This document shows positions 23,250 through 50,409 of a stretch of 64,000 nt of DNA, one piece after another. The notes under the pieces are model-generated. The model made no database searches. It was given only the letters and a program-made list of their open reading frames with translations, and was not told the origin of the DNA. The stretch spans positions 124,001 through 188,000 of IMG/VR virus record IMGVR_UViG_3300027996_002186. One strand, written 5' to 3'. A program made the position numbers and the translations under genes. How positions within the stretch are numbered: position 1 is the stretch's first letter; each line of letters opens with the position of its first letter.

Positions 23250-26200
23250 ATGTCAAATCATAAGAATCTTGTATTTTTCAATAAAGAAGGAGACTACTTA
23301 AACTTTAATTATAGTGAATCTAATGATAGATTCGAAGGAGATATGCTCTTTCACGAAAATTCAACAGATACGTTTAAGACTTATGGTCTTTATACTATGG
23401 AAAATATACCATCTTTTGAGTTTGAATTACCTGGTGAATTAACAACTAAAAAGTTTCAATTATTTAATGAATATGGTTTAAACCTATATGGTGCTAAGTA
23501 TGATGACCAAGATATAATAAATATCGAACCGGTTAATAACGATCCCTCTTTCTACTCTAAATGGATATATGGTATTGACTTTGAATCAAAATTCCCAACA
23601 GGAACACTTATCAAGTTTAATAGTCCTTTATTTGAGTTTAATAATATTAACCAAACATATGCTGTTGTTAGTAGTAAGAAAAATGCTATTATGATTATTG
23701 GGCAGATGGATAATGCTACATTTGAAAGTACTTACTATTCATCATATATTGATGTGAATAGTTATGATAATAAAACGATAACGGGAATTAATGCTGTTGG
23801 TGTTTATAATTATATAGATTCTTCTTATGATAATAATTTATCTGATTGGTCAGAGCCGGATTTTTATGATGAATATTATGTTGGTAAGAAATTAAATTTA
23901 GTTAATACTGAATTTAATGATTCGGTAGTCTCTGTTGAGAATATAGATGTTACAGATCAAGTTCATTTTGAATTCTCAACAAACAATTCTAATTTACCCG
24001 ATGATTCAAATTTTATAATAGAAGTTATAACAAAAACTGATATACCTAAGGTGTATGAAGGAGGGTTAAGTATAACTACTGATAGTAGAATCTATATAAA
24101 TAACGTTTTTAATTACCCACATATACTAAAATCTGGTACGGAATTCAAAATTATAGGATCTGTTGATAATCAAAATTTTTTAAGAGTTTCTAATATACCA
24201 ACATTTGCTGGTAACACACAATTAACATATTATGCTACACAGTCTCAAGTTTTATTCAATAATAGAATATATGAATGTGTAAAAGGTTATACACAAAGCT
24301 TTGCATCACAAACAACATCCTTTGTAACACCTTTAAATACTAATTATTGGTCTAACCCAACTTATGTTAAAGTTGAACAGTCCACGGTTGCAGAATCTTT
24401 ATTATCTGCTCAGATATATTTAACAACAGATAGATATTATTTTTATACTGGTTGGACTAGTTCAGCTGCTGTTACATTAGCGTCTGCTGCTGATAAATAT
24501 AAAGAAGATCTTAAAATATTTAATATTGATTTATTTTATAAAAATAATACATTAAAATCTGATTTAATTTATCCTAGTGATTATGCTAAAGTTAACTTTT
24601 ATCATAGTGAAATAGGTGCTACCTATTCCATCGGCTCTGAATTAAAAACTTCTGAGAGATTGGTTGAGGTTGAAGAAGAATTAAATTATGAATTAAATTA
24701 TGATATATCTGAGAATTTCAAATATAATATTGTTTTTACTGATATTGATGAATTTGGTATACTGGTCGAGGTCAATAAAATGATATATGATGAAGAAGTT
24801 GCCTTTATTTATACCGGATCAATCATTGATATGGAAAGAACAATAGATAGAACTTTAAGATCTTGGTTATCACGGTGGTATTTAAGATTATTATCATTAG
24901 GTATAATAGCTGAATTAAAATATGTAGGTAATTATACTTCTGTATTTTATAATTCAATTGTTTTGAGAACAGAATATCCTAATGTTCCACTTGATATAAA
25001 TAATGTTGAGGTTGGTATAACAGCAAATTATCATATAGAACACTCTAGAGTTTTGTTCGATGACATGGGACCATTTTTAAATATCATAATAAATGATGAA
25101 TCATATTCACAACAAACAATTTATAGTGGATTACTTCCGGATATCCCATCTACTTTATCAGCTTGGATGGAAAAACATTCTGAGATATTAGTCAGCTTCG
25201 AGATTTTCGTAACAAATATTAATAATTTATTGAAATTTGATATTAAGCATTTGGGTAGAAGACTAGATTATACAATAACTACTGGTAAATTAAATATACC
25301 GGGTTTACAAGATTATATAATAACAGAAAAGATATTAGGTAATCATGGTATGTTAATAGCTTCTAATGAGGTTTTACTACCTGATACATCATTAACATCA
25401 TTTGAGGATTCTGGGTTCGCTACGGGTATGGTATTTGCTATAAACAATACATACCATCCATATGTTAATCAAGATTTTAATATACAATTTTTAGACCCAC
25501 AGGTGCTGAATTTGAGTTATCAAGGACCTTTTTGGGGATTAACCGATAGTATTTGTAATTCATCAGCTTTTGTTACATTAGCATTTGATTATGGTTTTGG
25601 CCAAACTGGTTGCCAGCCAATAATTGTACCAACTCAATCTGAGGGTGGTGCGTTTGGCGGAGGTGATGATGGTGCTTCTCCAGGATTACCAATGAGCTCC
25701 TTCGATTTGAATATGTTCTCTTTATCATATAATCTGAATGAATATGTGGTTAATGAATATGATTTAAATTCTTTCTCTGGGACTACCGGATTAGTTGATA
25801 TTAAATATGTTCAGTTATCTAATTCTATGTATGCTTATGGAGATGAATTAGTTGTTATAGATGCTTATATAGGACAATATATAACAACAGTTGCTTTACC
25901 AGGTAATACACAAAGTATAGAGGTTGAATTTAACCCTATAAATAATTATCTTTACTGTTTATCTAAAAACAGTATTTATGTTGTTGATCCTCTTATTAAT
26001 ACCTTGATTAACACAATTTCTTTATCTAATGACGCTTTTGATATCGGGATGAATCCAATAAATGGTGATGTTTATGTTACATATGATAATATACCATATA
26101 TTGATATTTGGGAATATAATAATTTAACTAATATACCAAATCATAATCTGACAACACCATCACCATTAGATACTAAGACGGGAAAAATGGTATTTAATGA

Positions 26201-29117
26201 TTTTGAAGGTGATATGTATATTACAACTAATGCTGATTTGGTAGTTAGAATAGATGGTTTAACAAGAACATTTCAGACGAGTTATGGTGTTACTGGATTA
26301 ACACATTCGATTTTTTATGAACCGGTTAATGAGGGTATATATGTTTATGGATCTGCTAGTTTATGGAAAATAGATAATGGCGCTACACAATCGATTGCTT
26401 TACCATCACAAGCATTCAATGATGTTATATTTAATAATATAACTGGTGAGATGAACGTATCCGATTCATCTACAAATTTTACTAGAATGAATTTAGATAC
26501 TGATTTTTATTTACAAACCGGTGTTTCTAATTATGGGTATTTAATGATAAATCAATTTGATGGTGATGTTTATTTATCATCACAAACATATGATAATATA
26601 CTGGTTTTGGATGGTGTTGATGGTACTGTTAAATATACCGCTCCTGTGAGCGCACAGACGACAAAATTAGTTTATAATCCTGAAAGAAAATCTATATGGG
26701 CAATACAGCCATCTATAAACTCAGTCGTTGAGCTTGATGTTGAGCTTGGTGGTGTTATAAATTTATTACCACCAACATATGATACAATTGAGGATAATCA
26801 ATACGGTACTTTGGATCCAGATTATGAACAAAGAGAAAGTATTTGGTTAAAAACCAGAGATTATATGAGAAGACCGAGAGAAAATTTTGAGGGTGATGTC
26901 TCTGTTAAGTATTATTGGAGGTGGCTTTCTGATAATGTTCCTCAATTCTTCTTATATGATTTTAGTGGTATTCAATTAGATAGAACCACAACTGGATCAT
27001 ATTCTTATATTGGTGAAAGACCTTTAACAGAAGTAGTTCTTAATAAATATCCAAATAGTGATATTAGTAAGGTATCTTTGTCACAATACCAACAAACTAT
27101 ATTCGATAAGGTCGAACAAACATTAAGTTATGTTGATGATGAGGATGATATTTCAACTGATGTAGAACCTTTGCAATTATTTTTGGGATTCAAATCTGAA
27201 AATCCAGGTGCTTTAAGATCTGTATTGCAATTGTATAAGAAAGAAGAAATTTATTTCGATATTATATCGGATACTGTGAATAGTATTACACTTGAAACTT
27301 TGGATATTAATAATGAGAATAAAAGAGGTCAATTAACAATATTAGAATCATCAATTGAAACATTTACTAAAAAGGGATTAAAACCTGGTCAACATATTGT
27401 TGTTTATTTAAAGGATACTATGAATGATGAAAATCAGTATATATCTGGTAATAATGGTATTCTTTTGAAGGTTAGGGAGGTTTATACCAAGACGTTAGTT
27501 GTGGATTTCTTTAATCTATCTTATGACTTCATAGAGTATGAAAATACTGTTATATCGGATTATCCATTTGTCGGTACTAATACTTATTTAGATTTAAGTA
27601 TAAAGGTTGTTGATAGAGAAATAGGTAGGTTCACAACCTATGCTGAGACAGAGGAGGAAGATATTCGATTTAAAGTAGAATTGGGTAATGTTGGTAAATT
27701 AATTGGTCCAAATGAAGTTTTTATATTCAAGGAGTATGATATATTAGAGGGTGGTATAGACTGGCCTTATCTCAATAAGAAGAGAAAGGAGATGTTGATG
27801 ATGAAACATTTGATATATCCTTATATCGGAGCTTATAAGTCTATTATAAATGCGATTAATTACTTTGGTTATAATGATTTACAATTGAATGAATATTATA
27901 AAAATGTTGATCCAGCTTCCGAGAATTTCTCTAAGTTGTTTAAGGTTGAAATACCTGATATATTTGATAATAGTGTTGATGGTTGGGAAGAAAATGACTT
28001 CATAAAACACACAATGCCGAATAATAAATTTGATGGTACAAATTTATTTAATTTAACATATTTTATAACAGATAAAGAGGGTAATAATGTACTCAGTTAT
28101 AGTATTGATGAAATTATTATAAAATTACAAGGATTGAAATTTTGGCTTAAGAATAATATTATCCCATTGACACATAAGATAATGGATATAACAGGTAAAT
28201 CTTATATAAATAATGGTACTTATATAGTACACAAGGTACATGATGTTAGAATATTTAATATAAATCAAGAAATGACACCGATAACATTTAAATTAAATGA
28301 GTCTTATTTATCTCCTGTTAATAGTGGATCTACTGTTTATGATTGTGTTCTTGATTTTTATTCAATAATACCTGGAGTTGGTGCTGAGATTACACCATCG
28401 GAGACATTATTAGAAAAGCCTAAAACTTTTAATGGTTCTAATTTGGTTCTTCCTGATTATTTTAATATTAAAATAAGAACTTATAAAACTTATAAAGAAT
28501 GGGCTCCTTTTAAAACTTATATTACCGGTGATAAGGTTACTTATTATGATAAATTATATGAGTCTGTTATTGATAACAATAAGGTTAAAAATCCTAGAAA
28601 ATATGAAAATGCTACTGAGTGGAATGCTACTGATGGTTACCAATTAACTAATATAGTTCAATATAGAAGAGATTTTTATGTTTATAGTGGTTTAGGTAAT
28701 ACACAATCAATCATCAGTCCTAATTTAGATCCAGGAAATTGGTTAGATGTTACTGAGTGGAGGCAACTTGATTATGATCCTGTACAGACTATAAATGAAT
28801 TTAGATCTGGTGATGATTTGTTACCATTTAATTTCATTATTGATTCAAATATTGACCCGTTTATAGTCATTGAAGTTACATCAGATAATGGATATGGTAG
28901 TGTTTATAGTGATAAAAAAAATTATGAAATTAGAGGATTGAAAGATTTAACAGAACCATATAATCCTATTGATCCAATTGGTCCTTTTGAGCCAATACCA
29001 CCAGTTTATGGAGAACAACCAGCAATTCCTTTCCATGGTGGGCATGGAAACCCACATGGTGAGCCACCAGTACTACCACCACCCGGCCGTGGAGGAATTC
29101 CAAATATTTCGCCGTAG
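23250..29117 (+). CDS. Large virion structural protein (baseplate wedge/tail-associated) with beta-propeller and CBM-like modules
   Basis: 1955 aa; YVTN-like repeats (EFNPINNYLY, MNPINGDVYV); W...TY.TGDKV.Y..KLY modules; YIGAYKSIINAINYFGY is baseplate-like. Confidence 0.65.
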   Translation: MSNHKNLVFFNKEGDYLNFNYSESNDRFEGDMLFHENSTDTFKTYGLYTMENIPSFEFELPGELTTKKFQLFNEYGLNLYGAKYDDQDIINIEPVNNDPSFYSKWIYGIDFESKFPTGTLIKFNSPLFEFNNINQTYAVVSSKKNAIMIIGQMDNATFESTYYSSYIDVNSYDNKTITGINAVGVYNYIDSSYDNNLSDWSEPDFYDEYYVGKKLNLVNTEFNDSVVSVENIDVTDQVHFEFSTNNSNLPDDSNFIIEVITKTDIPKVYEGGLSITTDSRIYINNVFNYPHILKSGTEFKIIGSVDNQNFLRVSNIPTFAGNTQLTYYATQSQVLFNNRIYECVKGYTQSFASQTTSFVTPLNTNYWSNPTYVKVEQSTVAESLLSAQIYLTTDRYYFYTGWTSSAAVTLASAADKYKEDLKIFNIDLFYKNNTLKSDLIYPSDYAKVNFYHSEIGATYSIGSELKTSERLVEVEEELNYELNYDISENFKYNIVFTDIDEFGILVEVNKMIYDEEVAFIYTGSIIDMERTIDRTLRSWLSRWYLRLLSLGIIAELKYVGNYTSVFYNSIVLRTEYPNVPLDINNVEVGITANYHIEHSRVLFDDMGPFLNIIINDESYSQQTIYSGLLPDIPSTLSAWMEKHSEILVSFEIFVTNINNLLKFDIKHLGRRLDYTITTGKLNIPGLQDYIITEKILGNHGMLIASNEVLLPDTSLTSFEDSGFATGMVFAINNTYHPYVNQDFNIQFLDPQVLNLSYQGPFWGLTDSICNSSAFVTLAFDYGFGQTGCQPIIVPTQSEGGAFGGGDDGASPGLPMSSFDLNMFSLSYNLNEYVVNEYDLNSFSGTTGLVDIKYVQLSNSMYAYGDELVVIDAYIGQYITTVALPGNTQSIEVEFNPINNYLYCLSKNSIYVVDPLINTLINTISLSNDAFDIGMNPINGDVYVTYDNIPYIDIWEYNNLTNIPNHNLTTPSPLDTKTGKMVFNDFEGDMYITTNADLVVRIDGLTRTFQTSYGVTGLTHSIFYEPVNEGIYVYGSASLWKIDNGATQSIALPSQAFNDVIFNNITGEMNVSDSSTNFTRMNLDTDFYLQTGVSNYGYLMINQFDGDVYLSSQTYDNILVLDGVDGTVKYTAPVSAQTTKLVYNPERKSIWAIQPSINSVVELDVELGGVINLLPPTYDTIEDNQYGTLDPDYEQRESIWLKTRDYMRRPRENFEGDVSVKYYWRWLSDNVPQFFLYDFSGIQLDRTTTGSYSYIGERPLTEVVLNKYPNSDISKVSLSQYQQTIFDKVEQTLSYVDDEDDISTDVEPLQLFLGFKSENPGALRSVLQLYKKEEIYFDIISDTVNSITLETLDINNENKRGQLTILESSIETFTKKGLKPGQHIVVYLKDTMNDENQYISGNNGILLKVREVYTKTLVVDFFNLSYDFIEYENTVISDYPFVGTNTYLDLSIKVVDREIGRFTTYAETEEEDIRFKVELGNVGKLIGPNEVFIFKEYDILEGGIDWPYLNKKRKEMLMMKHLIYPYIGAYKSIINAINYFGYNDLQLNEYYKNVDPASENFSKLFKVEIPDIFDNSVDGWEENDFIKHTMPNNKFDGTNLFNLTYFITDKEGNNVLSYSIDEIIIKLQGLKFWLKNNIIPLTHKIMDITGKSYINNGTYIVHKVHDVRIFNINQEMTPITFKLNESYLSPVNSGSTVYDCVLDFYSIIPGVGAEITPSETLLEKPKTFNGSNLVLPDYFNIKIRTYKTYKEWAPFKTYITGDKVTYYDKLYESVIDNNKVKNPRKYENATEWNATDGYQLTNIVQYRRDFYVYSGLGNTQSIISPNLDPGNWLDVTEWRQLDYDPVQTINEFRSGDDLLPFNFIIDSNIDPFIVIEVTSDNGYGSVYSDKKNYEIRGLKDLTEPYNPIDPIGPFEPIPPVYGEQPAIPFHGGHGNPHGEPPVLPPPGRGGIPNISP

Positions 29118-31226: not shown

Positions 31227-34200
31227 TTAGTTTAATTCCTCTACATTCTGAATCTTTCCATCACTCGCATCTTGTATAAATTCATCTATTGTGTTTGTTG
31301 ATTTGTCAATATTTGTCAATAATCCTATTAATAAATCCAGTTGTTGTGGTATTGATCTACCTTCTAAACCATACTTAGTTTTATCTGTAAGATTAGGTAA
31401 CTTAACATTCTTTTTACCAACTGATTCTGGTTTATCTTCTCCACCCCATAATCCGGTAAATTTACCGAGGTCATCCATTGGGTGCCATCCACCATCATTC
31501 TCACTTTTTATTTGACTTAAATCATTTGCTAATTGATCAGTTTGAAGAGATTTAACTTCCTTTAGCTTTTCCATGTTGATTGCTTCTAAAGCAATTCCAA
31601 ATTTCTCAAAAGAGGTGGTTAATATATCATATGAATCCGCTAATACAACCATACCACCTGCAATTCTCATTATTGGATCCTCTCCAAATCCAAATGCGCC
31701 AGCAACACTACCCAAGAAGGATCCTTCTTTTTCTTCGACTCTTGTTAAATACTCAGCTAATCTAGTATAGTCTATTATATTTCTGCTTAATTTCTTTATA
31801 AAGAGAGGGTCTATTTTAACATCAAAATATTTTTTATTTTTATAAAAAATATAAGCTGTGTTTGCCATAGCTTGTGCTACTCTATCAATAATACCCATAT
31901 CTTTTTCAGTTCTAACCACTTCCGTTTTCGTACTCGTCTTAGCACCGAAACCAGCAAATCCTCCTGATTTACTACTTGTAGTTTTTGTTGAAGTAGTTAC
32001 TAACATATCATCAAGCCATTTTCCCAACTTTGCGAATCCCATTACATTCGTAGCTATATTTGGTATAAATTTTGGATCTAGTTTAACTGCAAAATATCTT
32101 TTATTATCAAAAAGAATACGGGCTGTGTTTGCCATTGATTGAACACCACCCTCCAACATTGAGGAGTTCACAGAAAAACTGTATTCGCTGTATCCAGCCA
32201 TAGTTAAATCATAAAATATATCTAAAAAGGAATTTATCGCCTTTCGAATACCGATACCCCATGCTTCATCAGGATGATTTTGCCAATATTCTTTCCCAAC
32301 ACTCCCTAGTGTTTCTCCAGCACTCCTTATAGATCTAGCTATGATTCTTATCCCAGATCCTAGTGATTGTGCTACTTCCTCTTGGCTTGGTCCAGTCCAT
32401 CCACCACCATTTGTCATCATCAGATTAAAGACTTCCGAGAACGATCCAATTGCTTCTGCAACACCTTTACCCCAACCTTTACCAGGAACATTGTCCTTTT
32501 TCCATATTTCTGGGATAGTGTCATAAAATATCCAACCCGCATCAACTATCGCCCTTGAAACCGATCGAATTCCGTAACTCATTGCCTTTATTGTCGTAAC
32601 AGACGAAGAATACCAGCTCGTATTGTTCATAGCTTCAAATACTGGTGCAAATGAGTTAATTGCTGCTCCAACACCTTCTCCCCAACGTTTTTTTGGATAG
32701 TTTTTCTTAAATGCTGCTTTATTTTCTGCGAATATACCCGCTGCATCTATAATAGCATAAGATATAGATCGGATAGCTCTTTCCATATCAGCTACTGATG
32801 GTCCATTGGACCACCCTCCTTGATTGTTCAAAACCTCATATACTGGTGCGAATGCGCCAATTGCTGTTCCAACCCCTTCGGCCCAACGTTTTGATGGTCC
32901 ATCCTTGAATTGGTCACTCGCTCCGGAAAATTTATCAGCGGCTGATATAATACCATCAGAAACCGTTGTGATAGCATTCGTAAAATCATCAGGACCTACA
33001 CCACTACCACCAAGTATTGACATTATAGAATTCATCTGCATCATTTTATAAATAGGCATAAATGCTCCTAATGCTATCGATATTCCTTCTGCCCACTCTT
33101 TTGTTGGACCACCTTTATAATTTCCCTTATAAAGAGTATGTGATACGGCTACTATTGTATCTGCTATCGTCAACATCATACCCTGTGCTACTAAAAATGG
33201 ATCATCTCCTCCGAAGAATGAAATAATAGCACCCGCTACACTCATGACACCCAATGCCATTATAATTGGTGTAAATGTTAAATATAATAATGCTGTAGCT
33301 GTTGCCCATTCTAACATACCTGCATTATCATATTTACCCTTGGATAGAATATCTGATACTTTTGCTATAGTAGCAGCTACAACTAGTATAGCACCTAAAC
33401 CAGCTAAAAATATTAGTGCTTGTGGACCAAATACCATCAGACCCAAGAGTATAGCGGCGGTAGCCATAACTGTCATAGCTAAGGCCACTCCGGCTAACCA
33501 CTCTATACCTGGGTAGGTTTCATAAGTACCTAATGCTTGAATGTAATCCAATGCTACAATAGCAAGTGCTACAACTAGTATAGCAACTAAACCAGCTAAA
33601 AATACTAGTGCTTGTGGACCAAATACAAACGATCCTAAGAGTACAGCAGCGACACCCATCGCTACCATACTTAAACCTACTCCGATTATCCAATCTAAAC
33701 CTGGATATGTATCATAATTACCTAATGCTAAAATGTGTGATGTTACCATTACTGCTACCGCTATAATCAAAATTGCTAATCCACCTTTTAATAGATCAAC
33801 AACACCCATCTTACTTAATACCTTCATTGGTCCGACTAATGCAATAGTAAGACCGGCCATTAATACACCAATTGCTGCTATTTTAAGTATTAGTCCCCAA
33901 CTTATATCAGCGGTTAATGCTAAAATGTGTGATGATACCATAATCGCTATTGATATCAATGTAAAGAATATTGGTATTTTAGGGAGTGATGACCATTCCA
34001 TTTTATTCATTGCTTTAACTATTTTTACCATCCCAAATGATAAAACAACAAATAATATTGCTATAAGTACTGATGTAAACCATTGCATAAGACCCACTGG
34101 TTGTACTAAAGAGAGTGCGTATGATGCTCCTGCTATACCTAGTGCGATAGCTGGTAGAATTAATGGTAAGAAAATAGATGCTTGTATTAAATCTTTGGTA

Positions 34201-35051
34201 CCCATTCCCTTAAATGCTTGTAACATATTTCTAATACCATATGATACTACTGCGAATATTGCCGCTATGAATATAGATGCTATTACTTGTGAGAATCCTA
34301 TTGGTTGTACTAATCCTAATGCGTATGATGCGAGAGCAATACCTAATGCGATAGCTGGTAAAATCAATGGTAAGAAAAGAACAGATTTCACTATACTGGC
34401 CATTGATAGACCCTTAAATGCTCCTAATAATTTTCTAATACCAAATGCAATTACCGAAAATACACCAGCTACAAAAACAGCGGTTATTGCTTGCATAAAT
34501 GATATAGGCCTTATCATTGATAATGCGTAAGATGAAAGAGCTACTGCTATTGACATAAATACCATAGCTAAAGAAGCCAGAGCTATATCTTTTAATGAGG
34601 ATCCTTTGGTCGCTTCCGCCACTTGAGCAAACGCGAATCCTATTGCTACCATAGCTAATCCTAAACCAATAGCTGATAAAACATCAACCGGTCCGACTAA
34701 TTTCAACGCTAATCCTATTGCTAAAACAGCTACTGCTATTAGTAATATAGTACCAACACCTTTTTTAATACTACTTTCTTTCTTCTTATCAGTACCACTT
34801 TCCTCAATAACATCCTTAGATTTCTCTTTGGAAAGAGCTATTATTGTTTTCTGATTGGTTAAAATTTCTTGAGTATCAGTTTTAATTGATTGTATACCTA
34901 CGTTTATGGCTTCTAATTTCTTACCAAAATCACCTCCTTTTAATGCAGCGCCTGTTGCAGAAGCACCATCTTTCTTACTATCGAGAGCTGCCGCTATCAT
35001 TTCTAATGAAACTGATAAATTGTCTAATGCTTTTAATAATTGCTTATCCAT
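31227..35051 (-). CDS. Tape-measure-like protein (1274 aa)
   Basis: Ala/Gly-rich helical repeats (VQPIGF x3; W.EG...AI..F.PV x5) with long hydrophobic stretches; late promoter upstream. Confidence 0.65.
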   Translation of the reverse strand: MDKQLLKALDNLSVSLEMIAAALDSKKDGASATGAALKGGDFGKKLEAINVGIQSIKTDTQEILTNQKTIIALSKEKSKDVIEESGTDKKKESSIKKGVGTILLIAVAVLAIGLALKLVGPVDVLSAIGLGLAMVAIGFAFAQVAEATKGSSLKDIALASLAMVFMSIAVALSSYALSMIRPISFMQAITAVFVAGVFSVIAFGIRKLLGAFKGLSMASIVKSVLFLPLILPAIALGIALASYALGLVQPIGFSQVIASIFIAAIFAVVSYGIRNMLQAFKGMGTKDLIQASIFLPLILPAIALGIAGASYALSLVQPVGLMQWFTSVLIAILFVVLSFGMVKIVKAMNKMEWSSLPKIPIFFTLISIAIMVSSHILALTADISWGLILKIAAIGVLMAGLTIALVGPMKVLSKMGVVDLLKGGLAILIIAVAVMVTSHILALGNYDTYPGLDWIIGVGLSMVAMGVAAVLLGSFVFGPQALVFLAGLVAILVVALAIVALDYIQALGTYETYPGIEWLAGVALAMTVMATAAILLGLMVFGPQALIFLAGLGAILVVAATIAKVSDILSKGKYDNAGMLEWATATALLYLTFTPIIMALGVMSVAGAIISFFGGDDPFLVAQGMMLTIADTIVAVSHTLYKGNYKGGPTKEWAEGISIALGAFMPIYKMMQMNSIMSILGGSGVGPDDFTNAITTVSDGIISAADKFSGASDQFKDGPSKRWAEGVGTAIGAFAPVYEVLNNQGGWSNGPSVADMERAIRSISYAIIDAAGIFAENKAAFKKNYPKKRWGEGVGAAINSFAPVFEAMNNTSWYSSSVTTIKAMSYGIRSVSRAIVDAGWIFYDTIPEIWKKDNVPGKGWGKGVAEAIGSFSEVFNLMMTNGGGWTGPSQEEVAQSLGSGIRIIARSIRSAGETLGSVGKEYWQNHPDEAWGIGIRKAINSFLDIFYDLTMAGYSEYSFSVNSSMLEGGVQSMANTARILFDNKRYFAVKLDPKFIPNIATNVMGFAKLGKWLDDMLVTTSTKTTSSKSGGFAGFGAKTSTKTEVVRTEKDMGIIDRVAQAMANTAYIFYKNKKYFDVKIDPLFIKKLSRNIIDYTRLAEYLTRVEEKEGSFLGSVAGAFGFGEDPIMRIAGGMVVLADSYDILTTSFEKFGIALEAINMEKLKEVKSLQTDQLANDLSQIKSENDGGWHPMDDLGKFTGLWGGEDKPESVGKKNVKLPNLTDKTKYGLEGRSIPQQLDLLIGLLTNIDKSTNTIDEFIQDASDGKIQNVEELN

Positions 35052-35130: not shown

Positions 35131-35580
35131 ATGGGATTTAAAAAGTTAGTTAATTACTACGTATTACGCAAATCTTTAAAAGAAATCGAGATGAATAGAA
35201 TTTTAGAAAAAATATACAAGAAAATAAAAATTTCTACTAAAGAAAAGAAATTTTTGGATTTATATAATCGTACTACCGAAGAGGTTGCTAAGGATTTGAT
35301 GTTCTTGTCTAAAAATGCAACTTCTAGAAAGGTTAAAGAAATATTAGAAAGAGGTAAGAAAGTCATTTGTGATTTACATGATAGGGATGGTAAAATTGGA
35401 CTTGAGATACTTAGTATTGAGAATAATGTCGATTCTGTTACATGTGATGTTATTATGAGAAATGAGACACATCAATTACATGATAGATTTTTATATAATA
35501 TTATTTATAATAATATAAAAAAAGAGTATTCATTACAAGAACAAGACGAATATTATGAAAAAATAGAAGCTACGAAATGA
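35131..35580 (+). CDS. Hypothetical protein with DUF6576-like segment
   Basis: MNRILEKI......TKEKKFL. Confidence 0.65.
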   Translation: MGFKKLVNYYVLRKSLKEIEMNRILEKIYKKIKISTKEKKFLDLYNRTTEEVAKDLMFLSKNATSRKVKEILERGKKVICDLHDRDGKIGLEILSIENNVDSVTCDVIMRNETHQLHDRFLYNIIYNNIKKEYSLQEQDEYYEKIEATK

Positions 35581-35849
35581 TAAAGAAATTTAAACAATTT
35601 AATGAAGAAATATCTGGTACTGAATTGGTTGGTCCTATTGGTCCTGCTTATGGTGAGACGGGGTTACAGAATAAAACCATAAATTCACATGACACAAATG
35701 TTATTTATTCAGAGATGGATTCTAAGATATATACAATAGATGAATATAATGATATTTATGGTGAGTACCTTAAATTTGGTGGATCTCCGTTAGATGGATT
35801 TACAAAAGAAAATATAGATATAATATTGGATTTTTTACAAACTAATTAA
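35577..35849 (+). CDS. CTS-tagged small protein
   Basis: MIKKFKQFNEE. Confidence 0.7.
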   Translation: MIKKFKQFNEEISGTELVGPIGPAYGETGLQNKTINSHDTNVIYSEMDSKIYTIDEYNDIYGEYLKFGGSPLDGFTKENIDIILDFLQTN

Positions 35850-35894
35850 TTTAATTTATATATACATTTTGATAAAAAACAGAAATCAAAATTT

Positions 35895-37223
35895 ATGAGC
35901 AAGTTAGTAACATTAAACGGGTTAAATGATGAAGAAATATTAAATGATATATTCATCGATGAGATAATTGTCCTTGAAGATATACAGGGAAGTAAAATAT
36001 GGGTTAATTGGGATGGTAAGCATTTTAATATCAAACCTAAATCTATATCAAATGAGTCAATAAATCTAATTGACTTAGCAATGCAAAATTATTATAATCC
36101 GGCTATCAATTATTTAAATTCATTAGATGATAGAACAAAAAGCCTTTTAAATAAAAAATGGTGGTTTTGTTTCGAGTATTTTCCTGATGAGCAACCTGCT
36201 AATATAGAGTATAATAGAGTTCCTAAGAATAATCTTGTTCTTACAGCTATTTCTAAGTCTAGAAAATATGAATTTACTATTGAAGAGTTAGATGAGTATT
36301 CTAGATTATTTAATGTTGATGTGGTGCCGGTTATATATCAAGGTACTTTGACCGAAAGTATGAAAGAAGCGATAAAGTATTTTATTAATACTAGTGAGGA
36401 TGATTTAGAGTATATTTTTGGTGAAAAGTCATTTGCATTCTTCTTTTATGGAATATTAAACCCATCAGTTAATAACTCTTTCTTAATGGATAATGAATTC
36501 CAAAATAATGTTGAGAAACTTATTATTAAGAGTAAAACAAAGGATATTTCATTTCAGTTATTAAATCCTTTATATAAAAGGTTGAGTGATGATAATCATA
36601 CAGACTTTGTTGAGATTTATACATTAATATTAATTAATTTCTTGAATTTTTCTCAATCTATTAATTTAGAAGATATTAAATTGAAAGGTGATAGAAAAGA
36701 TGAAGTTTACATATATTTAGTTTCTAAAATATTCAATGTTTATATATCGGAGGTCAAACAAGATTTACTTGACTTTGACTTTGTTGTTCCTGAATTCTTT
36801 GATAAGGATAAATTTAAGATAAATATTGAATTGATTAGTAATAAATTAACAAAGGATTATATAAAAGAGAGTGATAAATTAGAATATATTTTTAAGGTTA
36901 TTCTTGGATCTTTCAACAAGAAAAGAAAGAAACCAATTGGTATATTCACTGAGAATACAGTTAAGTTATTTAATAAATTTGTAGTTGATATCGATGATTA
37001 TATCGATACTTATTTAGGAAAACTACATGAAATTGAATTAGGTAGATCTGGTCTACTAGATTTCGGTGACTTCTTTGATATTCAATATGATACTGATGGA
37101 GAGGGTGAAGTTTATCCAGATGTTTACTCAGAGTTTTCTAAGACTGGTGGTCAGAACAAGAAGAAGAAAAAAGGTAAGGGTGGTAAATTCCCAATTGATC
37201 CAGGTAAAATTCCATTTAAATAA
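35895..37223 (+). CDS. RNA-ligase-like (Rnl2-type nucleotidyltransferase fold) protein lacking the adenylated Lys
   Basis: VLEDIQGS in place of EKxDGS; FCFEYF, VVPVIYQG, VEKLIIK resemble motifs III, IIIa and IV. Confidence 0.45.
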   Translation: MSKLVTLNGLNDEEILNDIFIDEIIVLEDIQGSKIWVNWDGKHFNIKPKSISNESINLIDLAMQNYYNPAINYLNSLDDRTKSLLNKKWWFCFEYFPDEQPANIEYNRVPKNNLVLTAISKSRKYEFTIEELDEYSRLFNVDVVPVIYQGTLTESMKEAIKYFINTSEDDLEYIFGEKSFAFFFYGILNPSVNNSFLMDNEFQNNVEKLIIKSKTKDISFQLLNPLYKRLSDDNHTDFVEIYTLILINFLNFSQSINLEDIKLKGDRKDEVYIYLVSKIFNVYISEVKQDLLDFDFVVPEFFDKDKFKINIELISNKLTKDYIKESDKLEYIFKVILGSFNKKRKKPIGIFTENTVKLFNKFVVDIDDYIDTYLGKLHEIELGRSGLLDFGDFFDIQYDTDGEGEVYPDVYSEFSKTGGQNKKKKKGKGGKFPIDPGKIPFK

Positions 37224-37414
37224 TGATTGATATTAAAATGACCTCTGTCGAGGTAAAGGCCGAAGTACGCGAACTAAAATGTAAATATACTCGTGAAATG
37301 GCTAAGGATATACACTATTATAGTGGTTTAGATCCTTTTAGTATGGATAATAGAAGAACAACAAGAAAAGATTCGATTAATAATATTTTTAATATAACAA
37401 AACATGATAAATAA
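37223..37414 (+). CDS. 63-aa mini-protein consisting of a gp23-like capsid segment plus the R..SINNIF motif
   Basis: VEVKAEVRELKCKYTREMAKDIHYYSGLD resembles T4 gp23 VIEAKSRQLKAAYSIELAQDLRAVHGMD; overlaps both neighbours. Confidence 0.65.
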   Translation: MIDIKMTSVEVKAEVRELKCKYTREMAKDIHYYSGLDPFSMDNRRTTRKDSINNIFNITKHDK

Positions 37415-38666
37415 TCCGCCTATAAAGAATATGAAGGTATCAAAAAAATTATCCAGTACGGATTCTTCCAAAAATATAGTTGAAAAGCTAAACAAGAAAA
37501 CTTTCCTATTACAATACTTACCATCCGTTTTAGAATACTTAGAATCAGAAAAATACATAAATTATAAAAATGAAAAGTTAAAAACAGCTTACTTGATCGA
37601 TATCATACATAATATGGTATTAAAATATTATTTCAAGAAAGAGAATAAATTTGTTATAAATGCAACTATATTGAAAGATAAGTATGGATATCTTTATAAT
37701 TATTATATCAATTATCTAATTGAGACCAAGATAATAAGTATGGTTTCTAATTATAGGAAAGGTGTATCTTCTCGTAAATATTCACTAAATGCTAAAATCA
37801 TCAAATCAAAGATTCAAAGAAGATATAGAAACAAAGATAAAGTCTTATTGAAGAAATATAAAAAGAAAGTAATGGATAGCATTGACTTCTCTGATAATGA
37901 TGATTATTTGATAGGTAAAGATATCCGAGAGAAATTAATATCTGACCTTTTTTCCGTTGAGATTCAATTCGATAGAGCTATATTTTTCCTGGATGCATTA
38001 AAAGATGAAAAATATGATGTCTATAATAGAAATGTTTATTCTGTTGAGTGTGTTAATGATAAGCATATATTTTATCACTTTGATAGCTATGGTAGAATGC
38101 ACACCAATTTCACAATACTTAGATCATTCATTAGAAAGAATTGTTTATTGATAGATGGTGAGGAAACTTGTGAGATAGATATTAAAAATAGCCAACCATT
38201 ATTCCTATCTAAATTAATAAAAGATAGTGATACTAAGTGGGTCAAGGAGGAAGAGTTTGAATTATTTAGAGAACTAACACTTAGTGGTAATTACTACCAA
38301 TACATGATGAATGTATTGGGTATTAAAAATAGAAACGATGCTAAGGAATTAACATACAAAGTTCTTTTTGGTAGAAACATTACTAGTAAGGCTGATATTG
38401 GATTTAGAAAGGCTTTCCCGACTATACACAATTTTATAAAATTATATAAAAAGGATAATGGTAATTATAAAACGATGGCTTATGATTTACAAAAAGCAGA
38501 GTCGAATCTTATATTCAATCGAATAATAAGACGTATAATTGTATTATACCCAGAAATAAAAATGATAACGGTACATGATAGTATTGTTTTTCCTAAAAAA
38601 TATAAAGACATTATTGATGATATCTTTGAACAAGAACTTGAAAATGAATTCAATTTAACAAAATAA
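37404..38666 (+). CDS. Compact family-A polymerase-superfamily protein (TV-Pol/T7-RNAP-like core, no exonuclease)
   Basis: YGRMH, motif A EIDIKNSQP, motif B RNDAKELTYKVLFG, Q..ES, motif C TVHDS. Confidence 0.75.
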   Translation: MINNPPIKNMKVSKKLSSTDSSKNIVEKLNKKTFLLQYLPSVLEYLESEKYINYKNEKLKTAYLIDIIHNMVLKYYFKKENKFVINATILKDKYGYLYNYYINYLIETKIISMVSNYRKGVSSRKYSLNAKIIKSKIQRRYRNKDKVLLKKYKKKVMDSIDFSDNDDYLIGKDIREKLISDLFSVEIQFDRAIFFLDALKDEKYDVYNRNVYSVECVNDKHIFYHFDSYGRMHTNFTILRSFIRKNCLLIDGEETCEIDIKNSQPLFLSKLIKDSDTKWVKEEEFELFRELTLSGNYYQYMMNVLGIKNRNDAKELTYKVLFGRNITSKADIGFRKAFPTIHNFIKLYKKDNGNYKTMAYDLQKAESNLIFNRIIRRIIVLYPEIKMITVHDSIVFPKKYKDIIDDIFEQELENEFNLTK

Positions 38667-38676
38667 TATATACAAT

Positions 38677-38838
38677 ATGAAAACTTACTATTTAAAATCA
38701 AAATTATCAAAAGAGGTTATAAGTAAATCAGTTTTTGAATCATTATCAATAGCTATTGAGTATTTTTCTGAAGTTAAGAGATTAAACCCTGAAGAACTTC
38801 TTAAAATATACATAGTCAATGATAGTGAACTAAAATAG
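38677..38838 (+). CDS. 53-aa hypothetical protein missed by the ORF track (MKTYYLKSKLSKEV...ELK)
   Basis: Hand translation; TAATATATAC immediately upstream; fills the intergenic gap. Confidence 0.6.
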   Translation: MKTYYLKSKLSKEVISKSVFESLSIAIEYFSEVKRLNPEELLKIYIVNDSELK

Positions 38839-38853
38839 TTAATATATACCTTT

Positions 38854-39393
38854 GTGATTGATTTAACTAACCCCAAAATATCATATATTGTGATATCATC
38901 TGAAAAGATTGATGATATTATGTCAATTTTGTATGCTAAAAATTATCAAATTATACCGATAAAGGGTTATTATCAAGGTCAATATGAGGATTCATTGATG
39001 GCTTTTGGTGTTGATAATGATGAGTTAAGAAAAGATTTGATTTTTTTACTTAACCATTTTAGAGAGGATTGTGGTATAGTTAAATACTTTGGTGAGACCG
39101 GTGCTAAGAAAGTGTTCAAAGACGGCTCAGAGAAGCCCTTAGGTATCGTATTGTATAATACAGACTCAGATAACATTTCATATTTATATGATGGTATATC
39201 GTTCTCTTTTGTTGAACAAGTTAGATATTGGAAACCTAAGAATAAAGAAGATTTTTCTGTTGGTATGTTAGTTGAATATATGAATAATAATAAGTGGTAT
39301 GAAAAGGAAGTTATTAATCCATCAGAAGAATACCATAAGCTATATAAGCTTATGATAAAGTATGATAAGATTAGAGTAGCTACTACTAACTAA
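38854..39393 (+). CDS. Hypothetical protein (179 aa)
   Basis: GTG start 5 nt after TTAATATATA. Confidence 0.7.
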   Translation: MIDLTNPKISYIVISSEKIDDIMSILYAKNYQIIPIKGYYQGQYEDSLMAFGVDNDELRKDLIFLLNHFREDCGIVKYFGETGAKKVFKDGSEKPLGIVLYNTDSDNISYLYDGISFSFVEQVRYWKPKNKEDFSVGMLVEYMNNNKWYEKEVINPSEEYHKLYKLMIKYDKIRVATTN

Positions 39394-47953: not shown

Positions 47954-49492
47954 ATGTTAGTCGAAACTCAATATTTAACACATAGTAAAAAATTAGTAGT
48001 AAGTTACGTTGATAAGACGGGCGATATAAAATTAAAATATTATAATTGGGATAATCCAATGAAATATGTTTCTTGTGAAGATACTGATAAGCAAAAGCAT
48101 CCAAAGTTTAAATCTTGGGATGGTAAGAATGTTAAGCAAATAGAGGTTAATCACCCAGATAGATATGCTGTTTATGAATTCTTAGATGGTTTACCAGAGA
48201 GTGAGAGAGAAGAAATATTCGAATTTAATTTACCTAAAATATACTTTATTGATATTGAGACAGAAATTGTTGATGGCTTTCCAGAAGCTGCTGATATTTA
48301 TAAGGAGGATGCTGATGGTAATAATATCCTTATAAAGGAGGGAGCTTGTACTAGAGTATTATCTATATCGATAGTTTATGATGATAAAATCATTCTATTG
48401 GGATTAAAGGATATGCCGGAAGATATGCAGGAAAGAATAATAACAAATACCAATGAATATTTCAAAGATGTTGGTGGTGTAGAGTATAAATTTAAGTATG
48501 TCAAATATGAAGATGAGTTTGATATGTTATATGCTTTCTTTCATAAGATGGTTCCTAAGATGCCACTACTAACTGGTTGGAATTTCCTTAAATATGATTG
48601 GTTGTATTTAGTTAACCGTTGTAAAAAGATATCAAAATGGGTAAATGGTAAAGAATATACCATAAATCCAAATGTTTCATCTTTAACAAAAAGATTAAAT
48701 AAGAAATGGGGTACTGAATATGAAGTTCCTGCTCATAGGATGATTTTTGATTATATGCAGTTGTATGAGATATGTGATACATCTATTAAAGTAAAGGAAT
48801 CATCATCTTTAGATTTCGTTTCGAGTAAATTAGTTGGTGTTGAAAAGATTAAATACACTGGGTCGTTACAGAAGCTATATGAGGATGACTTTGAAACATT
48901 TATGTATTATAATGCTGTCGATTCTGTATTGGTACAAAAAATACATGATTCAAGAAATTATATCTCTATTATTTATGCGATTTCTTCATTGTCTAAAATC
49001 AGAATAGTTGATGTTGTTTCTCAAATGAATAATGCTCTTGGTTCATTAGCTATTACAGAAGGCGTTTTGAGAAACAGATTTCGTGAAATGGATAACATAG
49101 TATTATTCAAAGAAGAAAAGGGTGATGCTGAATCCACAATCGCCGGCGGATGGGTTAAGGATCCTGTCGTGGGTATGAATGAGTGGGTTGTGTGTTACGA
49201 TTTTGCTTCCTTGTATCCAACTACACAAAGGCAATTTTATATATCACCAGAGAACTTTGTGGGTATCCAAGATAAAGAGGATAAGGCTAAGTGTGCTAAT
49301 GGTAGACCGATTGAAGATAATATGGTCGTCTGTGTAAACGGTAGTGTTTTTGAAAAAAGATTATCACCTACACTTAGGATGTTGGAGGATGTTTATGGTG
49401 ATAGAAAGAAGAATAAGAAAATAATGATGGTTAAGAAAGAAGAACGTAAAGATATTCTTGATCAAATAGCTGAATTAGAAGGAGAGATATAA
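47954..49492 (+). CDS. gp43: Family B DNA polymerase, N-terminal subunit (3'-5' exonuclease plus motif A); split gp43A-like
   Basis: FIDIETE, TGWNFLKYDW.Y, YNAVD, YDFASLYP; ends before KxxxNSxYG and YGDTDS. Confidence 0.88.
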   Translation: MLVETQYLTHSKKLVVSYVDKTGDIKLKYYNWDNPMKYVSCEDTDKQKHPKFKSWDGKNVKQIEVNHPDRYAVYEFLDGLPESEREEIFEFNLPKIYFIDIETEIVDGFPEAADIYKEDADGNNILIKEGACTRVLSISIVYDDKIILLGLKDMPEDMQERIITNTNEYFKDVGGVEYKFKYVKYEDEFDMLYAFFHKMVPKMPLLTGWNFLKYDWLYLVNRCKKISKWVNGKEYTINPNVSSLTKRLNKKWGTEYEVPAHRMIFDYMQLYEICDTSIKVKESSSLDFVSSKLVGVEKIKYTGSLQKLYEDDFETFMYYNAVDSVLVQKIHDSRNYISIIYAISSLSKIRIVDVVSQMNNALGSLAITEGVLRNRFREMDNIVLFKEEKGDAESTIAGGWVKDPVVGMNEWVVCYDFASLYPTTQRQFYISPENFVGIQDKEDKAKCANGRPIEDNMVVCVNGSVFEKRLSPTLRMLEDVYGDRKKNKKIMMVKKEERKDILDQIAELEGEI

Positions 49493-50304: not shown

Positions 50305-50361
50305 AAAATATTTAGGTGTTTTCTTATATATTTATATTACTTCTTAAAAAAGTACATTTTA

Positions 50362-50388
50362 CAACTAAAGTCTAAAAAAAGATATAAT
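50362..50388 (+). promoter_or_regulatory. Putative middle promoter variant CAAC-N17-TATAAT
   Basis: Upstream of ATG 50410. Confidence 0.4.
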
Positions 50389-50409
50389 TTTTATAAAATA
50401 AATTATTCT

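What the first reader, a model, noticed from the sequence alone, without database searches (positions are those of the whole stretch)
37404..38666. Compact family-A-superfamily polymerase in a phage that replicates with PolB
Seen: motifs A (EIDIKNSQP), B (RNDAKELTYKVLFG) and C (TVHDS) in 420 aa, with a basic wHTH-like N-terminus and no exonuclease. It lies in an operon with a dead ligase and a capsid mini-fragment. Known: TV-Pol-type proteins are related to both PolA and T7 RNAP and were predicted to be primer-synthesising enzymes. Inference: could be a primase, repair polymerase or small-RNA polymerase.
Basis: partly seen in the sequence, partly recalled or inferred. Interest (0 to 1): 0.65.

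Follow-up and report, generated by a model that had tools for sequence, protein, structure and literature searches.

The report
Compact winged-helix PolA-type polymerase in megaphage
A marine megaphage encodes a 420-residue enzyme made of a basic winged-helix domain fused to a stripped-down family-A DNA polymerase core; it belongs to a very large, uncharacterised family also carried by bacterial mobile elements, and is best read as a TV-Pol-type DNA polymerase, possibly a primase-polymerase, not an RNA polymerase.

Summary
The ORF (37404-38666, +, 420 aa) and its motifs are real. [quoted passage not shown] Residues ~40-142 form a basic winged helix, and there is no nuclease domain.

A profile of 95 diverse members aligns to PolA with motifs A, B and C in register (E 5.5e-5) but not to T7-type RNA polymerases (E 0.72). 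The catalytic residues are invariant. The sugar-selecting positions look DNA-polymerase-like: Gln where PolA has its steric-gate Glu and T7 RNAP has Gly, and Phe where T7 RNAP has Tyr639.

The family has about 2,700 clusters at 50% identity, no Pfam model and no characterised member. Bacterial relatives with the same architecture sit beside resolvases, integrases and excisionase-like genes, as described for TV-Pols.

The supposed operon partners are not functional partners. The downstream gene is a SAM-lyase-like counter-defence protein. The ligase-like upstream gene is unlinked in distant megaphages. The capsid-fragment similarity is marginal.

Relatives encode a Toprim primase, so a missing primase cannot be used as an argument. 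Primase-polymerase versus gap-filling remains open. It is a new member of a known kind, of moderate interest.

The parts
37404..38666 (+). Whole ORF, 420 aa (P0001): basic winged-helix domain fused to a minimal family-A polymerase core
37506..37838 (+). Residues ~35-145: winged helix-turn-helix domain, strongly basic (residues 1-165 net charge +22); presumed nucleic-acid grip
   Evidence: DSSP of the model. About 30 winged-helix hits at Z 6-7 over model residues 40-142, including ORC WH, TubR and Rpa2 WH. Charge. The domain is conserved in bacterial relatives.
37839..38063 (+). Residues ~146-220: helical thumb region
   Evidence: Helices 146-160, 172-182, 189-197 and 204-218. The polymerase hits start at model residues ~160-166.
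38073..38105 (+). Residues 224-234: beta-hairpin with invariant R231 and H233, in the string G-R-x-H-T-N-F, which resembles the PolA 'GRxHTS' motif
   Evidence: The resemblance to the PolA motif is from my own knowledge. The TV-Pol definition of a hairpin with an invariant Arg is in PMC2579912.
38160..38198 (+). Residues 253-265: palm strand and motif A, with catalytic D259 (invariant) and Q264 at the steric-gate position
   Evidence: D259 aligns to T7 DNAP D475; Q264 to E480
38331..38372 (+). Residues 310-323: motif B / O-helix (R310, K314, Y318, F322, G323)
   Evidence: aligned to T7 DNAP R518, K522, Y526, Y530, G531
38487..38504 (+). Residues 362-367: conserved L-Q-x-x-E-S; Q363 aligns to T7 DNAP Q615 and E366 is invariant
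38565..38594 (+). Residues 388-397: palm hairpin and motif C, with T-V-H391-D392-S393 (H and D invariant)
   Evidence: aligned to T7 DNAP H653, D654, E655
35895..37223 (+). Upstream neighbour, 442 aa, Rnl2-ligase-like by features, with an invariant E-D-[IV]-Q-G-S-K string (Asp where ligases have the nucleophilic Lys). Syntenic in 77 of 84 related loci but unlinked in distant megaphages. Not shown to be a functional partner.
37223..37414 (+). 63-aa ORF overlapping both neighbours; marginal Gp23-like similarity; detected in only 35 of 84 loci
38854..39393 (+). Downstream neighbour, 179 aa: phage SAM-lyase (T3 SAMase) fold plus a small C-terminal beta domain. Not an SSB.

Best explanation
The gene encodes an active, DNA-templated, dNTP-using polymerase of the TV-Pol type. 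It is a minimal family-A thumb-palm-fingers core with no proofreading or 5' nuclease domain, fused to a strongly basic winged-helix domain that probably holds the template or a specific DNA site. Shown: the fold, the two-domain architecture, invariant catalytic residues (D259, D392, K314 and the hairpin R231), closer kinship to PolA DNA polymerases than to T7-type RNA polymerases, and membership of one family with proteins of bacterial integrative elements. Inferred: (i) dNTP preference, from Gln at the steric-gate position and Phe at the T7 RNAP Tyr639 position; (ii) the role. I think it most likely acts as an auxiliary primase-polymerase or initiator that starts or extends short DNA stretches beside the split PolB replisome, with the fused winged helix doing what the separate ssDNA-binding partner MP does for the SCCmec primase CcPol-MP. 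I put about 0.85 on 'active family-A-type DNA polymerase', about 0.7 on dNTP over NTP, and about 0.35 on true de novo priming.
For: The AlphaFold model has pLDDT 93.7 and pTM 0.90. The top Foldseek hits are all PolA, E from 6e-5. In the VIA-align search, 17 of the top 18 chains are PolA or T7-like RNAPs: Z 12.8 apPol, 12.5 Aquifex Pol I and T7 DNAP, 12.0 Klenow, with ~245 residues aligned at 3.4-4.0 A rmsd. hhalign of the family profile against a PolA mini-profile gives E 5.5e-5 over 164 columns, with motifs A, B and C in register. Catalytic residues are invariant in 95 members that are 27-65% identical to the query, which argues for an enzyme under selection. The family is large: 2,744 clusters at 50% identity. 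Bacterial relatives share the full architecture (hhalign E 2.7e-64 over 369 columns). They sit next to HTH_17, resolvase and integrase genes in islands, which is the context Iyer et al. used to propose replicative priming for TV-Pols. The only characterised TV-Pol, CcPol-MP, is a dNTP-using primase that needs an ssDNA-binding partner. In LR756511 a family member is translationally coupled to a Pfam-recognisable compact PolA, in a phage with no PolB hit. In LR756504 an XPD-like helicase lies 1.9 kb downstream of the family member.
Against: There is no biochemical evidence for any member of this sub-family. Megaphages of this group encode a Toprim-type primase: a PHROG 849 hit at E 7e-27 in LR745206 and a primase subunit annotated in Mar_Mega_1. 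A second primase is therefore not required. No helicase, SSB or integrase is adjacent in this phage. No RNA-library contig covers the ORF. The Q264 steric-gate assignment rests on a profile alignment with a 2-residue gap next to it, not on a superposition. Pfam DNA_pol_A does not detect the protein. The family profiles do not detect anything in Ma-LMM01, a phage said to carry a TV-Pol.
Confidence: 0.6

Rival explanations
1. It is a gap-filling or repair DNA polymerase with a Pol I-like job. An exonuclease-less PolA core fills primer gaps or repair patches, while separately encoded RNase H/5' nuclease and ligase finish the job, as a 'Pol I in pieces' beside the PolB replisome.
For: It has the same fold and dNTP-like active site as Pol I. 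A canonical Toprim primase exists in relatives, so priming is already covered. A related megaphage is annotated with a separate RNase H/5'-3' exonuclease. The gene lies 10-13 kb from the PolB N-part and an XPD-like helicase in the window, and 1.9 kb from such a helicase in LR756504.
Against: It does not explain why the same family is the apparent sole replication-type gene next to resolvase/integrase in bacterial islands. It gives no reason for a fused, strongly basic winged helix. The adjacent ligase-like protein lacks the nucleophilic lysine in all 61 homologs and is unlinked to the polymerase in distant megaphages.
Confidence: 0.25
2. It is a miniature T7-like single-subunit RNA polymerase that makes small RNAs or RNA primers.
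For: T7 RNAP, mitochondrial RNAPs and N4 RNAP II appear among the structural hits (Z 8.3-10.8). Motif C is H-D-S as in T7 RNAP rather than H-D-E. One Atlas look-alike cluster is auto-named 'DNA-directed RNA polymerase family'.
Against: The RNAP hits score about 2 Z units below the PolA hits and have high rmsd (5.8-7.6 A). The profile comparison to T7-type RNAPs is not significant (E 0.72, against 5.5e-5 for PolA). The position of T7 RNAP Gly542 is Gln in 93 of 95 members, and that of Tyr639 is Phe in 87 of 95. The G-R-x-H-T-N-F hairpin motif is PolA-like.
Confidence: 0.07
3. It is a relic or passenger of a mobile element that inserted into an ancestral megaphage and does nothing for the phage.
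For: Relatives live in bacterial integrative elements. Iyer et al. describe a TV-Pol element inside phage Ma-LMM01. The gene's position differs between distant megaphages.
Against: It is present as a single copy in all six huge-phage records tested (five distinct genomes, since LR756503 gives the same hit as LR756501) and in 172 IMG/VR relatives. Catalytic residues are invariant. No integrase, resolvase or HTH_17 gene lies next to it in the phages. Its position is stably syntenic across a clade down to ~51% identity.
Confidence: 0.08

Closest known systems
TV-Pol family (Iyer, Abhiman & Aravind 2008, PMC2579912), subset with an N-terminal accessory domain linked to resolvase, integrase or transposase genes
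   Same: Both have a minimal family-A core: a helical thumb, a beta-hairpin with an invariant Arg, an RRM palm with two invariant Asp, and fingers carrying RxxxK. Neither has a nuclease domain. Sizes are 400-600 aa. Bacterial relatives occur in Bacteroidota, Planctomycetota and Verrucomicrobiota next to resolvase/integrase genes.
   Different: No direct sequence link to a named founding member was obtained (nothing in Ma-LMM01). The virophage TV-Pol (Zamilon) is structurally no closer than ordinary PolA. The N-terminal domain is a winged helix here, whereas the paper predicted an all-helical domain. The phage copy has no helicase or recombinase neighbour.
CcPol-MP primase of SCCmec and the PolA-SSB primases (PMC7581432, PMC10061031)
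   Same: Both have an A-family catalytic core carried by a mobile element or virus and lack proofreading. The proposed logic is the same: an added DNA-binding module lets a PolA core start chains with dNTPs.
   Different: CcPol needs a separate OB-fold partner encoded downstream and sits in a helicase operon. Here the downstream gene is SAM-lyase-like, no helicase is adjacent, and the DNA-binding candidate is a fused winged helix. CcPol keeps the steric-gate Glu (E174); this family has Gln.
Bacterial and phage DNA polymerase I / T7 DNA polymerase (family A)
   Same: Best structural matches (Z 12-12.8). Motifs A, B and C align in register, and there is a PolA-like G-R-x-H-T hairpin.
   Different: About 255 residues instead of ~400 for the polymerase domain. 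No 3'-5' or 5'-3' nuclease domains. Not detected by Pfam DNA_pol_A. Motif C is HDS rather than HDE, and the steric gate is Gln rather than Glu.
T7-like single-subunit RNA polymerases, including the compact N4 RNAP II
   Same: They share the palm-fingers-thumb fold and the HDS form of motif C. N4 RNAP II gp16 has a similar size (404 aa).
   Different: Lower structural scores, no significant profile similarity, and no Gly/Tyr pair at the sugar-selecting positions.

Membership tests
Family-A polymerase superfamily (PolA / T7 RNAP fold) | Right-hand thumb-palm-fingers fold of family A | tested here: met
   Foldseek E from 6e-5, with all top hits PolA. VIA-align Z 12.8-12.0 over ~245 residues at rmsd 3.4-4.0 A.
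Family-A polymerase superfamily (PolA / T7 RNAP fold) | Motif A Asp, motif B R-x3-K-x3-[YF]-x3-[YF]-G, and motif C H-D, all conserved and in register | tested here: met
   hhalign against a PolA mini-profile gives E 5.5e-5 over 164 columns. Residue invariance is shown and T7 numbering was verified.
Family-A polymerase superfamily (PolA / T7 RNAP fold) | Recognised by the curated Pfam model DNA_pol_A (PF00476) | tested here: not met
   No hit at E<=1 for P0001 or at E<=0.1 for 95 members. PF00476 finds only the true PolA in bacterial genomes that also carry a relative.
TV-Pol family (PMC2579912) | Minimal core: helical thumb, beta-hairpin with an absolutely conserved Arg, RRM palm with two conserved Asp, and fingers with RxxxK | tested here: met
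   Secondary structure. R231, D259 and D392 are invariant; position 310 is R or K in 86 of 95; K314 is invariant. The definition was read.
TV-Pol family (PMC2579912) | Never fused or linked to nuclease domains | tested here: met
   The 420-aa model has only a winged helix plus the polymerase core. No nuclease domain was found in the neighbours.
TV-Pol family (PMC2579912) | Linked to a D5-like helicase, or to resolvase, integrase or transposase genes in mobile elements | tested here: inconclusive
   Met for bacterial relatives: resolvase and HTH_17 in Mucilaginibacter, integrase and HTH_17 in Moheibacter, resolvase and integrase in Haloferula. Not met for the phage copy.
TV-Pol family (PMC2579912) | Detectable sequence relationship to a named founding member | tested here: not met
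   Profiles A1 and A5 find nothing in Microcystis phage Ma-LMM01. The Zamilon virophage replication protein is only a Foldseek E 2.8e-3 hit, no better than PolA. Other founding members could not be fetched by name.
PolA-SSB primases (CcPol-MP type) | A small OB-fold ssDNA-binding partner encoded next to the polymerase | tested here: not met
   The conserved downstream 179-aa protein has a SAM-lyase fold (Z 12.2 to 7ock_L; Foldseek E 6.7e-4). The 53-aa and 63-aa ORFs are detected in only 38 and 35 of 84 loci.
PolA-SSB primases (CcPol-MP type) | Primer-independent DNA synthesis with dNTPs | not testable with these tools
   This needs a biochemical assay, as in PMC7581432.
T7-like single-subunit RNA polymerase | Profile-level sequence similarity to the T7 RNAP family | tested here: not met
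   hhalign E 0.72 (profile) and 0.58 (single sequence).
T7-like single-subunit RNA polymerase | Small residue (Gly542) at the steric-gate position and Tyr639 for 2'-OH selection | tested here: not met
   Gln in 93 of 95 and Phe in 87 of 95 at the aligned positions. The register comes from a profile alignment, not from a superposition.
Rnl2-type RNA ligase (for the 442-aa neighbour) | Nucleotidyltransferase motif I with the nucleophilic Lys, and recognition by Pfam RNA_ligase | tested here: not met
   No Pfam hit in 26 members and no PDB profile hit. The motif-I-like string has Asp at the Lys position in 61 of 61 homologs. Only the Atlas features point to RNA_ligase clusters (0.93-0.94).
Phage SAM lyase / T3 SAMase (for the 179-aa neighbour) | SAM-lyase fold | tested here: met
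   7ock_L Z 12.2, rmsd 2.7 A, 118 residues aligned; the next unrelated hits are at Z about 7. Foldseek gives 7ock, 8bb1 and 6znb as top hits. Catalytic residues were not examined.

The most novel reading that the evidence does not exclude
This may be a single-chain family-A primase-polymerase. The fused basic winged helix would replace the separate ssDNA-binding subunit of CcPol-MP, letting a ~255-residue PolA core start DNA chains de novo with dNTPs. That would make the ~2,700-cluster family a third widespread primase type, used both by megaphages (beside or paired with their main polymerase, as the tandem arrangement in LR756511 hints) and by bacterial integrative elements.
Probability: 0.3. 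Interest if true: 0.7.

Novelty: new member of a known kind. Interest (0 to 1): 0.45.

Why it matters
Only one TV-Pol-type enzyme (CcPol-MP) has ever been assayed, and it proved to be an unconventional dNTP-using primase. This protein represents a much larger branch with no Pfam model and no characterised member. The branch is a conserved single-copy gene of the largest known phages and also occurs in bacterial integrative elements. A 420-residue, single-chain, exonuclease-free family-A polymerase with its own DNA-binding domain is a tractable target. It could help define the minimal PolA catalytic unit and show how priming can arise in this fold. It could also help explain how megaphages with a split PolB organise replication or repair, and it may be a useful compact enzyme. 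The work also corrects the context: the neighbours are a SAM-lyase-like counter-defence gene and an unlinked ligase-like protein, not partners of the polymerase.

Tried and rejected
- **Sequence-only searches of P0001 found nothing.** This covers Pfam, PHROGs, NCBIfam, PADLOC, PDB sequences by phmmer, and the A1 profile by hmmsearch.
I used a 20-sequence subset instead.
- **Contexts of three distant metagenomic members** were on contigs too short to be useful. Three bacterial look-ups were not on record.
- **PolA-SSB hypothesis for the downstream 179-aa gene: rejected.** The protein is SAM-lyase-like, not OB-fold. I therefore make no binding claim and did not run complex prediction.
- **Functional 'ligase-polymerase cassette': rejected as unsupported.** Synteny in 77-81 of 84 loci is matched by unrelated neighbours (an opposite-strand glycosyltransferase in 75 of 84) and breaks in distant megaphages.
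- **'No primase, so this is the primase': rejected.** A Toprim primase core is present in LR745206 and a primase subunit is annotated in Mar_Mega_1.
- **Direct link to the Ma-LMM01 TV-Pol:** two profile searches found nothing.
- **Extra fused domains in longer bacterial versions:** none found by Pfam.
- **Promoter scan:** uninformative in this AT-rich DNA (49 sites against 37 expected).
- **Expression:** RNA-library contigs cover the 149-aa and 442-aa genes but not the polymerase ORF, which is no evidence either way.

Table 11 was used throughout.
Full report
**1. The observation**

The window carries an ORF at 37404-38666 on the + strand, 420 aa, stored as P0001. The first 165 residues have 36 Lys/Arg against 14 Asp/Glu (net +22); the rest is net -2. 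Sequence-only methods do not recognise the protein. Pfam, PHROGs, NCBIfam, PADLOC and a phmmer search of all PDB chains found nothing relevant.

**2. Genome and environment**

The window is part of a 76.9-kb IMG/VR fragment. It has a T4-type portal and Gp23 capsid gene, an RNase R/II-like gene, ribonucleotide reductase, an XPD-like helicase and the N-terminal part of a PolB.

In the phage collection the protein has relatives only in uncultured huge phages of 595-735 kb: LR745206 (75% identity), LR756502, LR756501/3, LR756504 and LR756511. These are the Al-Shayeb et al. 2020 megaphages discussed with the marine Mar_Mega_1 in PMC9723777. Near-identical DNA occurs in seawater, marine and brine metagenomes from about 15 studies. 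IMG/VR holds 100% identical copies on contigs up to 483 kb.

**3. The family**

- The word-based search found 1,313 unnamed proteins with no Pfam domain.
- The exhaustive search of 50%-identity representatives found 2,744 clusters at E<=1e-3 and 921 at E<=1e-10.
- In an alignment of 95 full-length representatives (27-65% identical to P0001), R231, H233, D259, Y298, K314, E366, H391 and D392 are invariant.
- N262, S263, Q264, P265, F322 and G323 are at 87-93 of 95.
- Even this profile finds nothing in PDB sequences, and none of the 95 members hits Pfam.

**4. Fold**

With that alignment AlphaFold2 gives pLDDT 93.7 and pTM 0.90.

- Foldseek against the PDB returns only family-A DNA polymerases at the top: apicoplast Pol at 6e-5, then Pol theta, M. 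smegmatis Pol1, Klenow, T7 DNAP and Taq.
- The Foldseek-independent VIA-align search of 48,161 chains gives Z 12.8 (apPol), 12.5 (Aquifex Pol I, T7 DNAP), 12.0 (Klenow) and 11.9 (Pol nu), with ~245 residues aligned at 3.4-4.0 A.
- T7-like RNA polymerases follow: yeast mtRNAP 10.8, T7 RNAP 10.3 and N4 RNAP II 8.3, the first two with rmsd 5.8-7.6 A.
- The polymerase match covers model residues ~165-418.
- A separate block of ~30 winged-helix hits (ORC WH, TubR, Rpa2 WH, MCM8 WH; Z 6-7) covers residues 40-142.
- There is no room for, and no sign of, an exonuclease domain.
- In BFVD the closest structure is a 403-aa protein already labelled 'Putative DNA polymerase I [uncultured marine phage]' (45% identity, TM 0.91). 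The virophage TV-Pol protein of Zamilon scores only E 2.8e-3, no better than ordinary PolA.
- Atlas searches return unnamed or 'family A palm' clusters from Bacteroidota and Uroviricota.

**5. DNA or RNA polymerase?**

I built small profiles from T7 DNAP plus six bacterial PolA proteins, and from eight T7-like RNAPs. hhalign of the family profile gives E 5.5e-5 (164 columns) against PolA and E 0.72 against the RNAPs (single sequences).

The aligned residues, with T7 numbering verified, are:

| This protein | T7 DNA polymerase |
|---|---|
| D259 | D475 |
| Q264 | E480 |
| R310 / K314 / Y318 / F322 / G323 | R518 / K522 / Y526 / Y530 / G531 |
| Q363 | Q615 |
| H391 / D392 / S393 | H653 / D654 / E655 |

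From established knowledge of family A, E480 (Klenow E710) is the steric gate against ribonucleotides and corresponds to Gly542 in T7 RNAP. Y530 (Klenow Y766) corresponds to T7 RNAP Tyr639, whose hydroxyl selects the 2'-OH. This family has Gln (93 of 95) and Phe (87 of 95) at those positions. That is not the RNA polymerase pattern, and Gln is nearly isosteric with the DNA polymerase Glu. CcPol, the one characterised TV-Pol, keeps the E710 and F762 equivalents and uses dNTPs.

The only RNAP-like trait is Ser instead of Glu after the motif C Asp. I therefore favour a dNTP-using DNA polymerase. This is an inference, and the Q264 register rests on an alignment with a neighbouring gap.

**6. Relatives outside phages**

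A scan of one genome per species found 39 loci in Planctomycetota, Bacteroidota, Verrucomicrobiota, Ignavibacteria and others, including cultured Mucilaginibacter, Haloferula, Hymenobacter and Moheibacter. Eighteen of these proteins (349-653 aa) align to the phage-centred profile with hhalign E 2.7e-64 over 369 columns, N-terminal domain included. They are therefore one family with one architecture.

Their neighbourhoods are those of mobile elements:
- HTH_17, then the polymerase, then a resolvase 2 kb on, in Mucilaginibacter.
- Integrase, Fic, HTH_17, then the polymerase, with an IS3 nearby, in Moheibacter.
- Resolvase, the polymerase, then integrase at an island edge, in Haloferula.
- ParB/methylase genes on one side and CBASS plus a type I R-M system on the other, in Botrimarina.

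This is what Iyer et al. describe for the TV-Pol subset that carries an N-terminal domain. All four structural features they use to define the TV-Pol core are present here. However, neither family profile detects anything in Ma-LMM01, which the paper names as a TV-Pol carrier. Membership is therefore supported by architecture and context, not by a direct sequence link.

**7. The 'operon'**

Genes at 35131-39393 lie on one strand with overlaps or gaps of at most ~15 nt and no + strand terminator. Across 84 related viral loci the 442-aa gene lies upstream in 77 and the 179-aa gene downstream in 81. An opposite-strand glycosyltransferase is retained in 75, so this is general collinearity.

In LR756501 and LR756504 the 442-aa homolog is ~258 kb and ~92 kb from the polymerase.

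The 179-aa protein folds confidently (pLDDT 91). Its residues 6-124 match the T3 SAM hydrolase/lyase (7ock_L Z 12.2, rmsd 2.7 A, 118 residues; the next unrelated hits are near Z 7). Foldseek also ranks 7ock, 8bb1 and 6znb first. It is a counter-defence-type protein, not an SSB.

The 442-aa protein resembles Rnl2-type ligases only by language-model features (0.93-0.94), with no HMM or PDB-profile support. Its motif-I-like E-D-[IV]-Q-G-S-K string is invariant in 61 homologs, with Asp where ligases have the nucleophilic Lys. 'Dead ligase' is therefore plausible but unproven.

The 63-aa ORF's Gp23 similarity is marginal, and it is detectable in only 35 of 84 loci.

**8. Replication inventory of complete relatives**

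- The four PolB-type megaphage genomes have no Pfam PolA, no zinc-ribbon or N-terminal DnaG domains, no AEP Prim-Pol, and only borderline Toprim_2 hits.
- However, the LR745206 Toprim ORF (193 aa) matches PHROG 849 'DNA primase' at E 7e-27.
- Mar_Mega_1 is annotated with a primase subunit, a primase-helicase and an RNase H. A canonical primase is therefore present in this group.
- PolB is split. The N-part (as in the window) and a C-part ORF lie ~100 kb apart in LR745206 and LR756502. Only the N-part is in this fragment.
- LR756511 has no PolB hit and has a clear DnaG-like primase. There the family member (387 aa, E 7e-43 to the profile) overlaps by 4 nt a 428-aa compact PolA that Pfam recognises at E 1e-19.
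- In LR756504 an XPD-like helicase lies 1.9 kb downstream of the family member.

**9. Expression**

Contigs from two marine metatranscriptome libraries match the 149-aa and 442-aa genes at >=99% identity, but none covers the polymerase ORF. DNA carry-over cannot be excluded. This gives no information on expression of the polymerase.

**10. Verdict**

The protein is almost certainly an active, exonuclease-less, family-A-type DNA polymerase with a fused basic winged helix. It belongs to a huge uncharacterised family shared by megaphages and bacterial integrative elements, and it fits the TV-Pol concept.

The RNA polymerase reading is disfavoured. Whether it primes de novo or only fills gaps cannot be decided computationally. 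I lean to a primase-polymerase or initiator role because of the mobile-element contexts and the CcPol-MP precedent. The presence of a Toprim primase in relatives keeps the gap-filling rival alive.

The neighbouring genes say nothing about its function. Literature searches found no paper describing this sub-family.

Noticed in passing
window 38854-39393 (+): This 179-aa protein is conserved in 81 of 84 related loci. Its residues 6-124 have the phage T3 SAM hydrolase/lyase fold (Z 12.2 to 7ock_L; Foldseek E 6.7e-4), followed by a small C-terminal beta domain. It is a likely anti-restriction or counter-defence gene in a marine megaphage. No Pfam, PHROG or PADLOC hit.
   Followed up: partly
window 47954-49492 (+); LR745206 233.9 kb and 130.6-131.9 kb: PolB appears split. 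The 512-aa ORF in the window holds only the exonuclease and the start of the polymerase domain (Pfam profile 17-151). In LR745206 and LR756502 the rest (profile ~124-452) is a separate 474-484-aa ORF about 100 kb away.
   Followed up: partly
L004 (LR756511) 3599-4762 and 4759-6045: This megaphage has no PolB hit. It carries a member of this family (387 aa) overlapping by 4 nt a 428-aa compact, exonuclease-less PolA that Pfam recognises (E 1e-19). This could be a two-polymerase pair.
   Followed up: partly
window 35895-37223 (+): This 442-aa protein is better conserved (62-86%) than the polymerase. It is Rnl2-ligase-like by Atlas features only, with an invariant E-D-[IV]-Q-G-S-K string (Asp at the ligase lysine position). 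RNA-library contigs from two marine metatranscriptomes cover parts of it.
   Followed up: partly
L221 (LR745206 361.5-366 kb) 1106-1870 and 1867-2448: The Toprim primase core (193 aa, PHROG 849 E 7e-27, profile positions 150-337 of 435) is preceded by a 254-aa ORF that overlaps it by 4 nt and has no hit. The primase may be split or have a divergent N-terminal part.
   Followed up: no
window 9280-11244 (-): A full RNase II/R-type exoribonuclease (RNB domain E 1e-110, with CSD and S1 domains) is encoded next to the portal and capsid genes of the phage.
   Followed up: no
window 31227-35051 (-) and 23250-29117 (+): There is a 1,274-aa protein with many repeated hydrophobic segments in a locally GC-richer stretch (0.39 against ~0.29). 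I did not scan it against any family library. There is also a 1,955-aa ORF with no Pfam hit.
   Followed up: no
L003 (LR756504) 7181-8866: An XPD/Rad3-like helicase (Helicase_C_2, ResIII, DEAD_2) lies 1.9 kb downstream of the polymerase homolog. It has the same Pfam domain set as the helicase at window 50293-52077, which sits beside the PolB N-part.
   Followed up: no
L128, L129, L130, L220 (bacterial loci): Bacterial family members sit in islands rich in defence genes: NB-ARC, a DNA methylase, CBASS with patatin, type I R-M and Fic. An HTH_17 excisionase-like gene lies just upstream in two of the four loci.
   Followed up: partly
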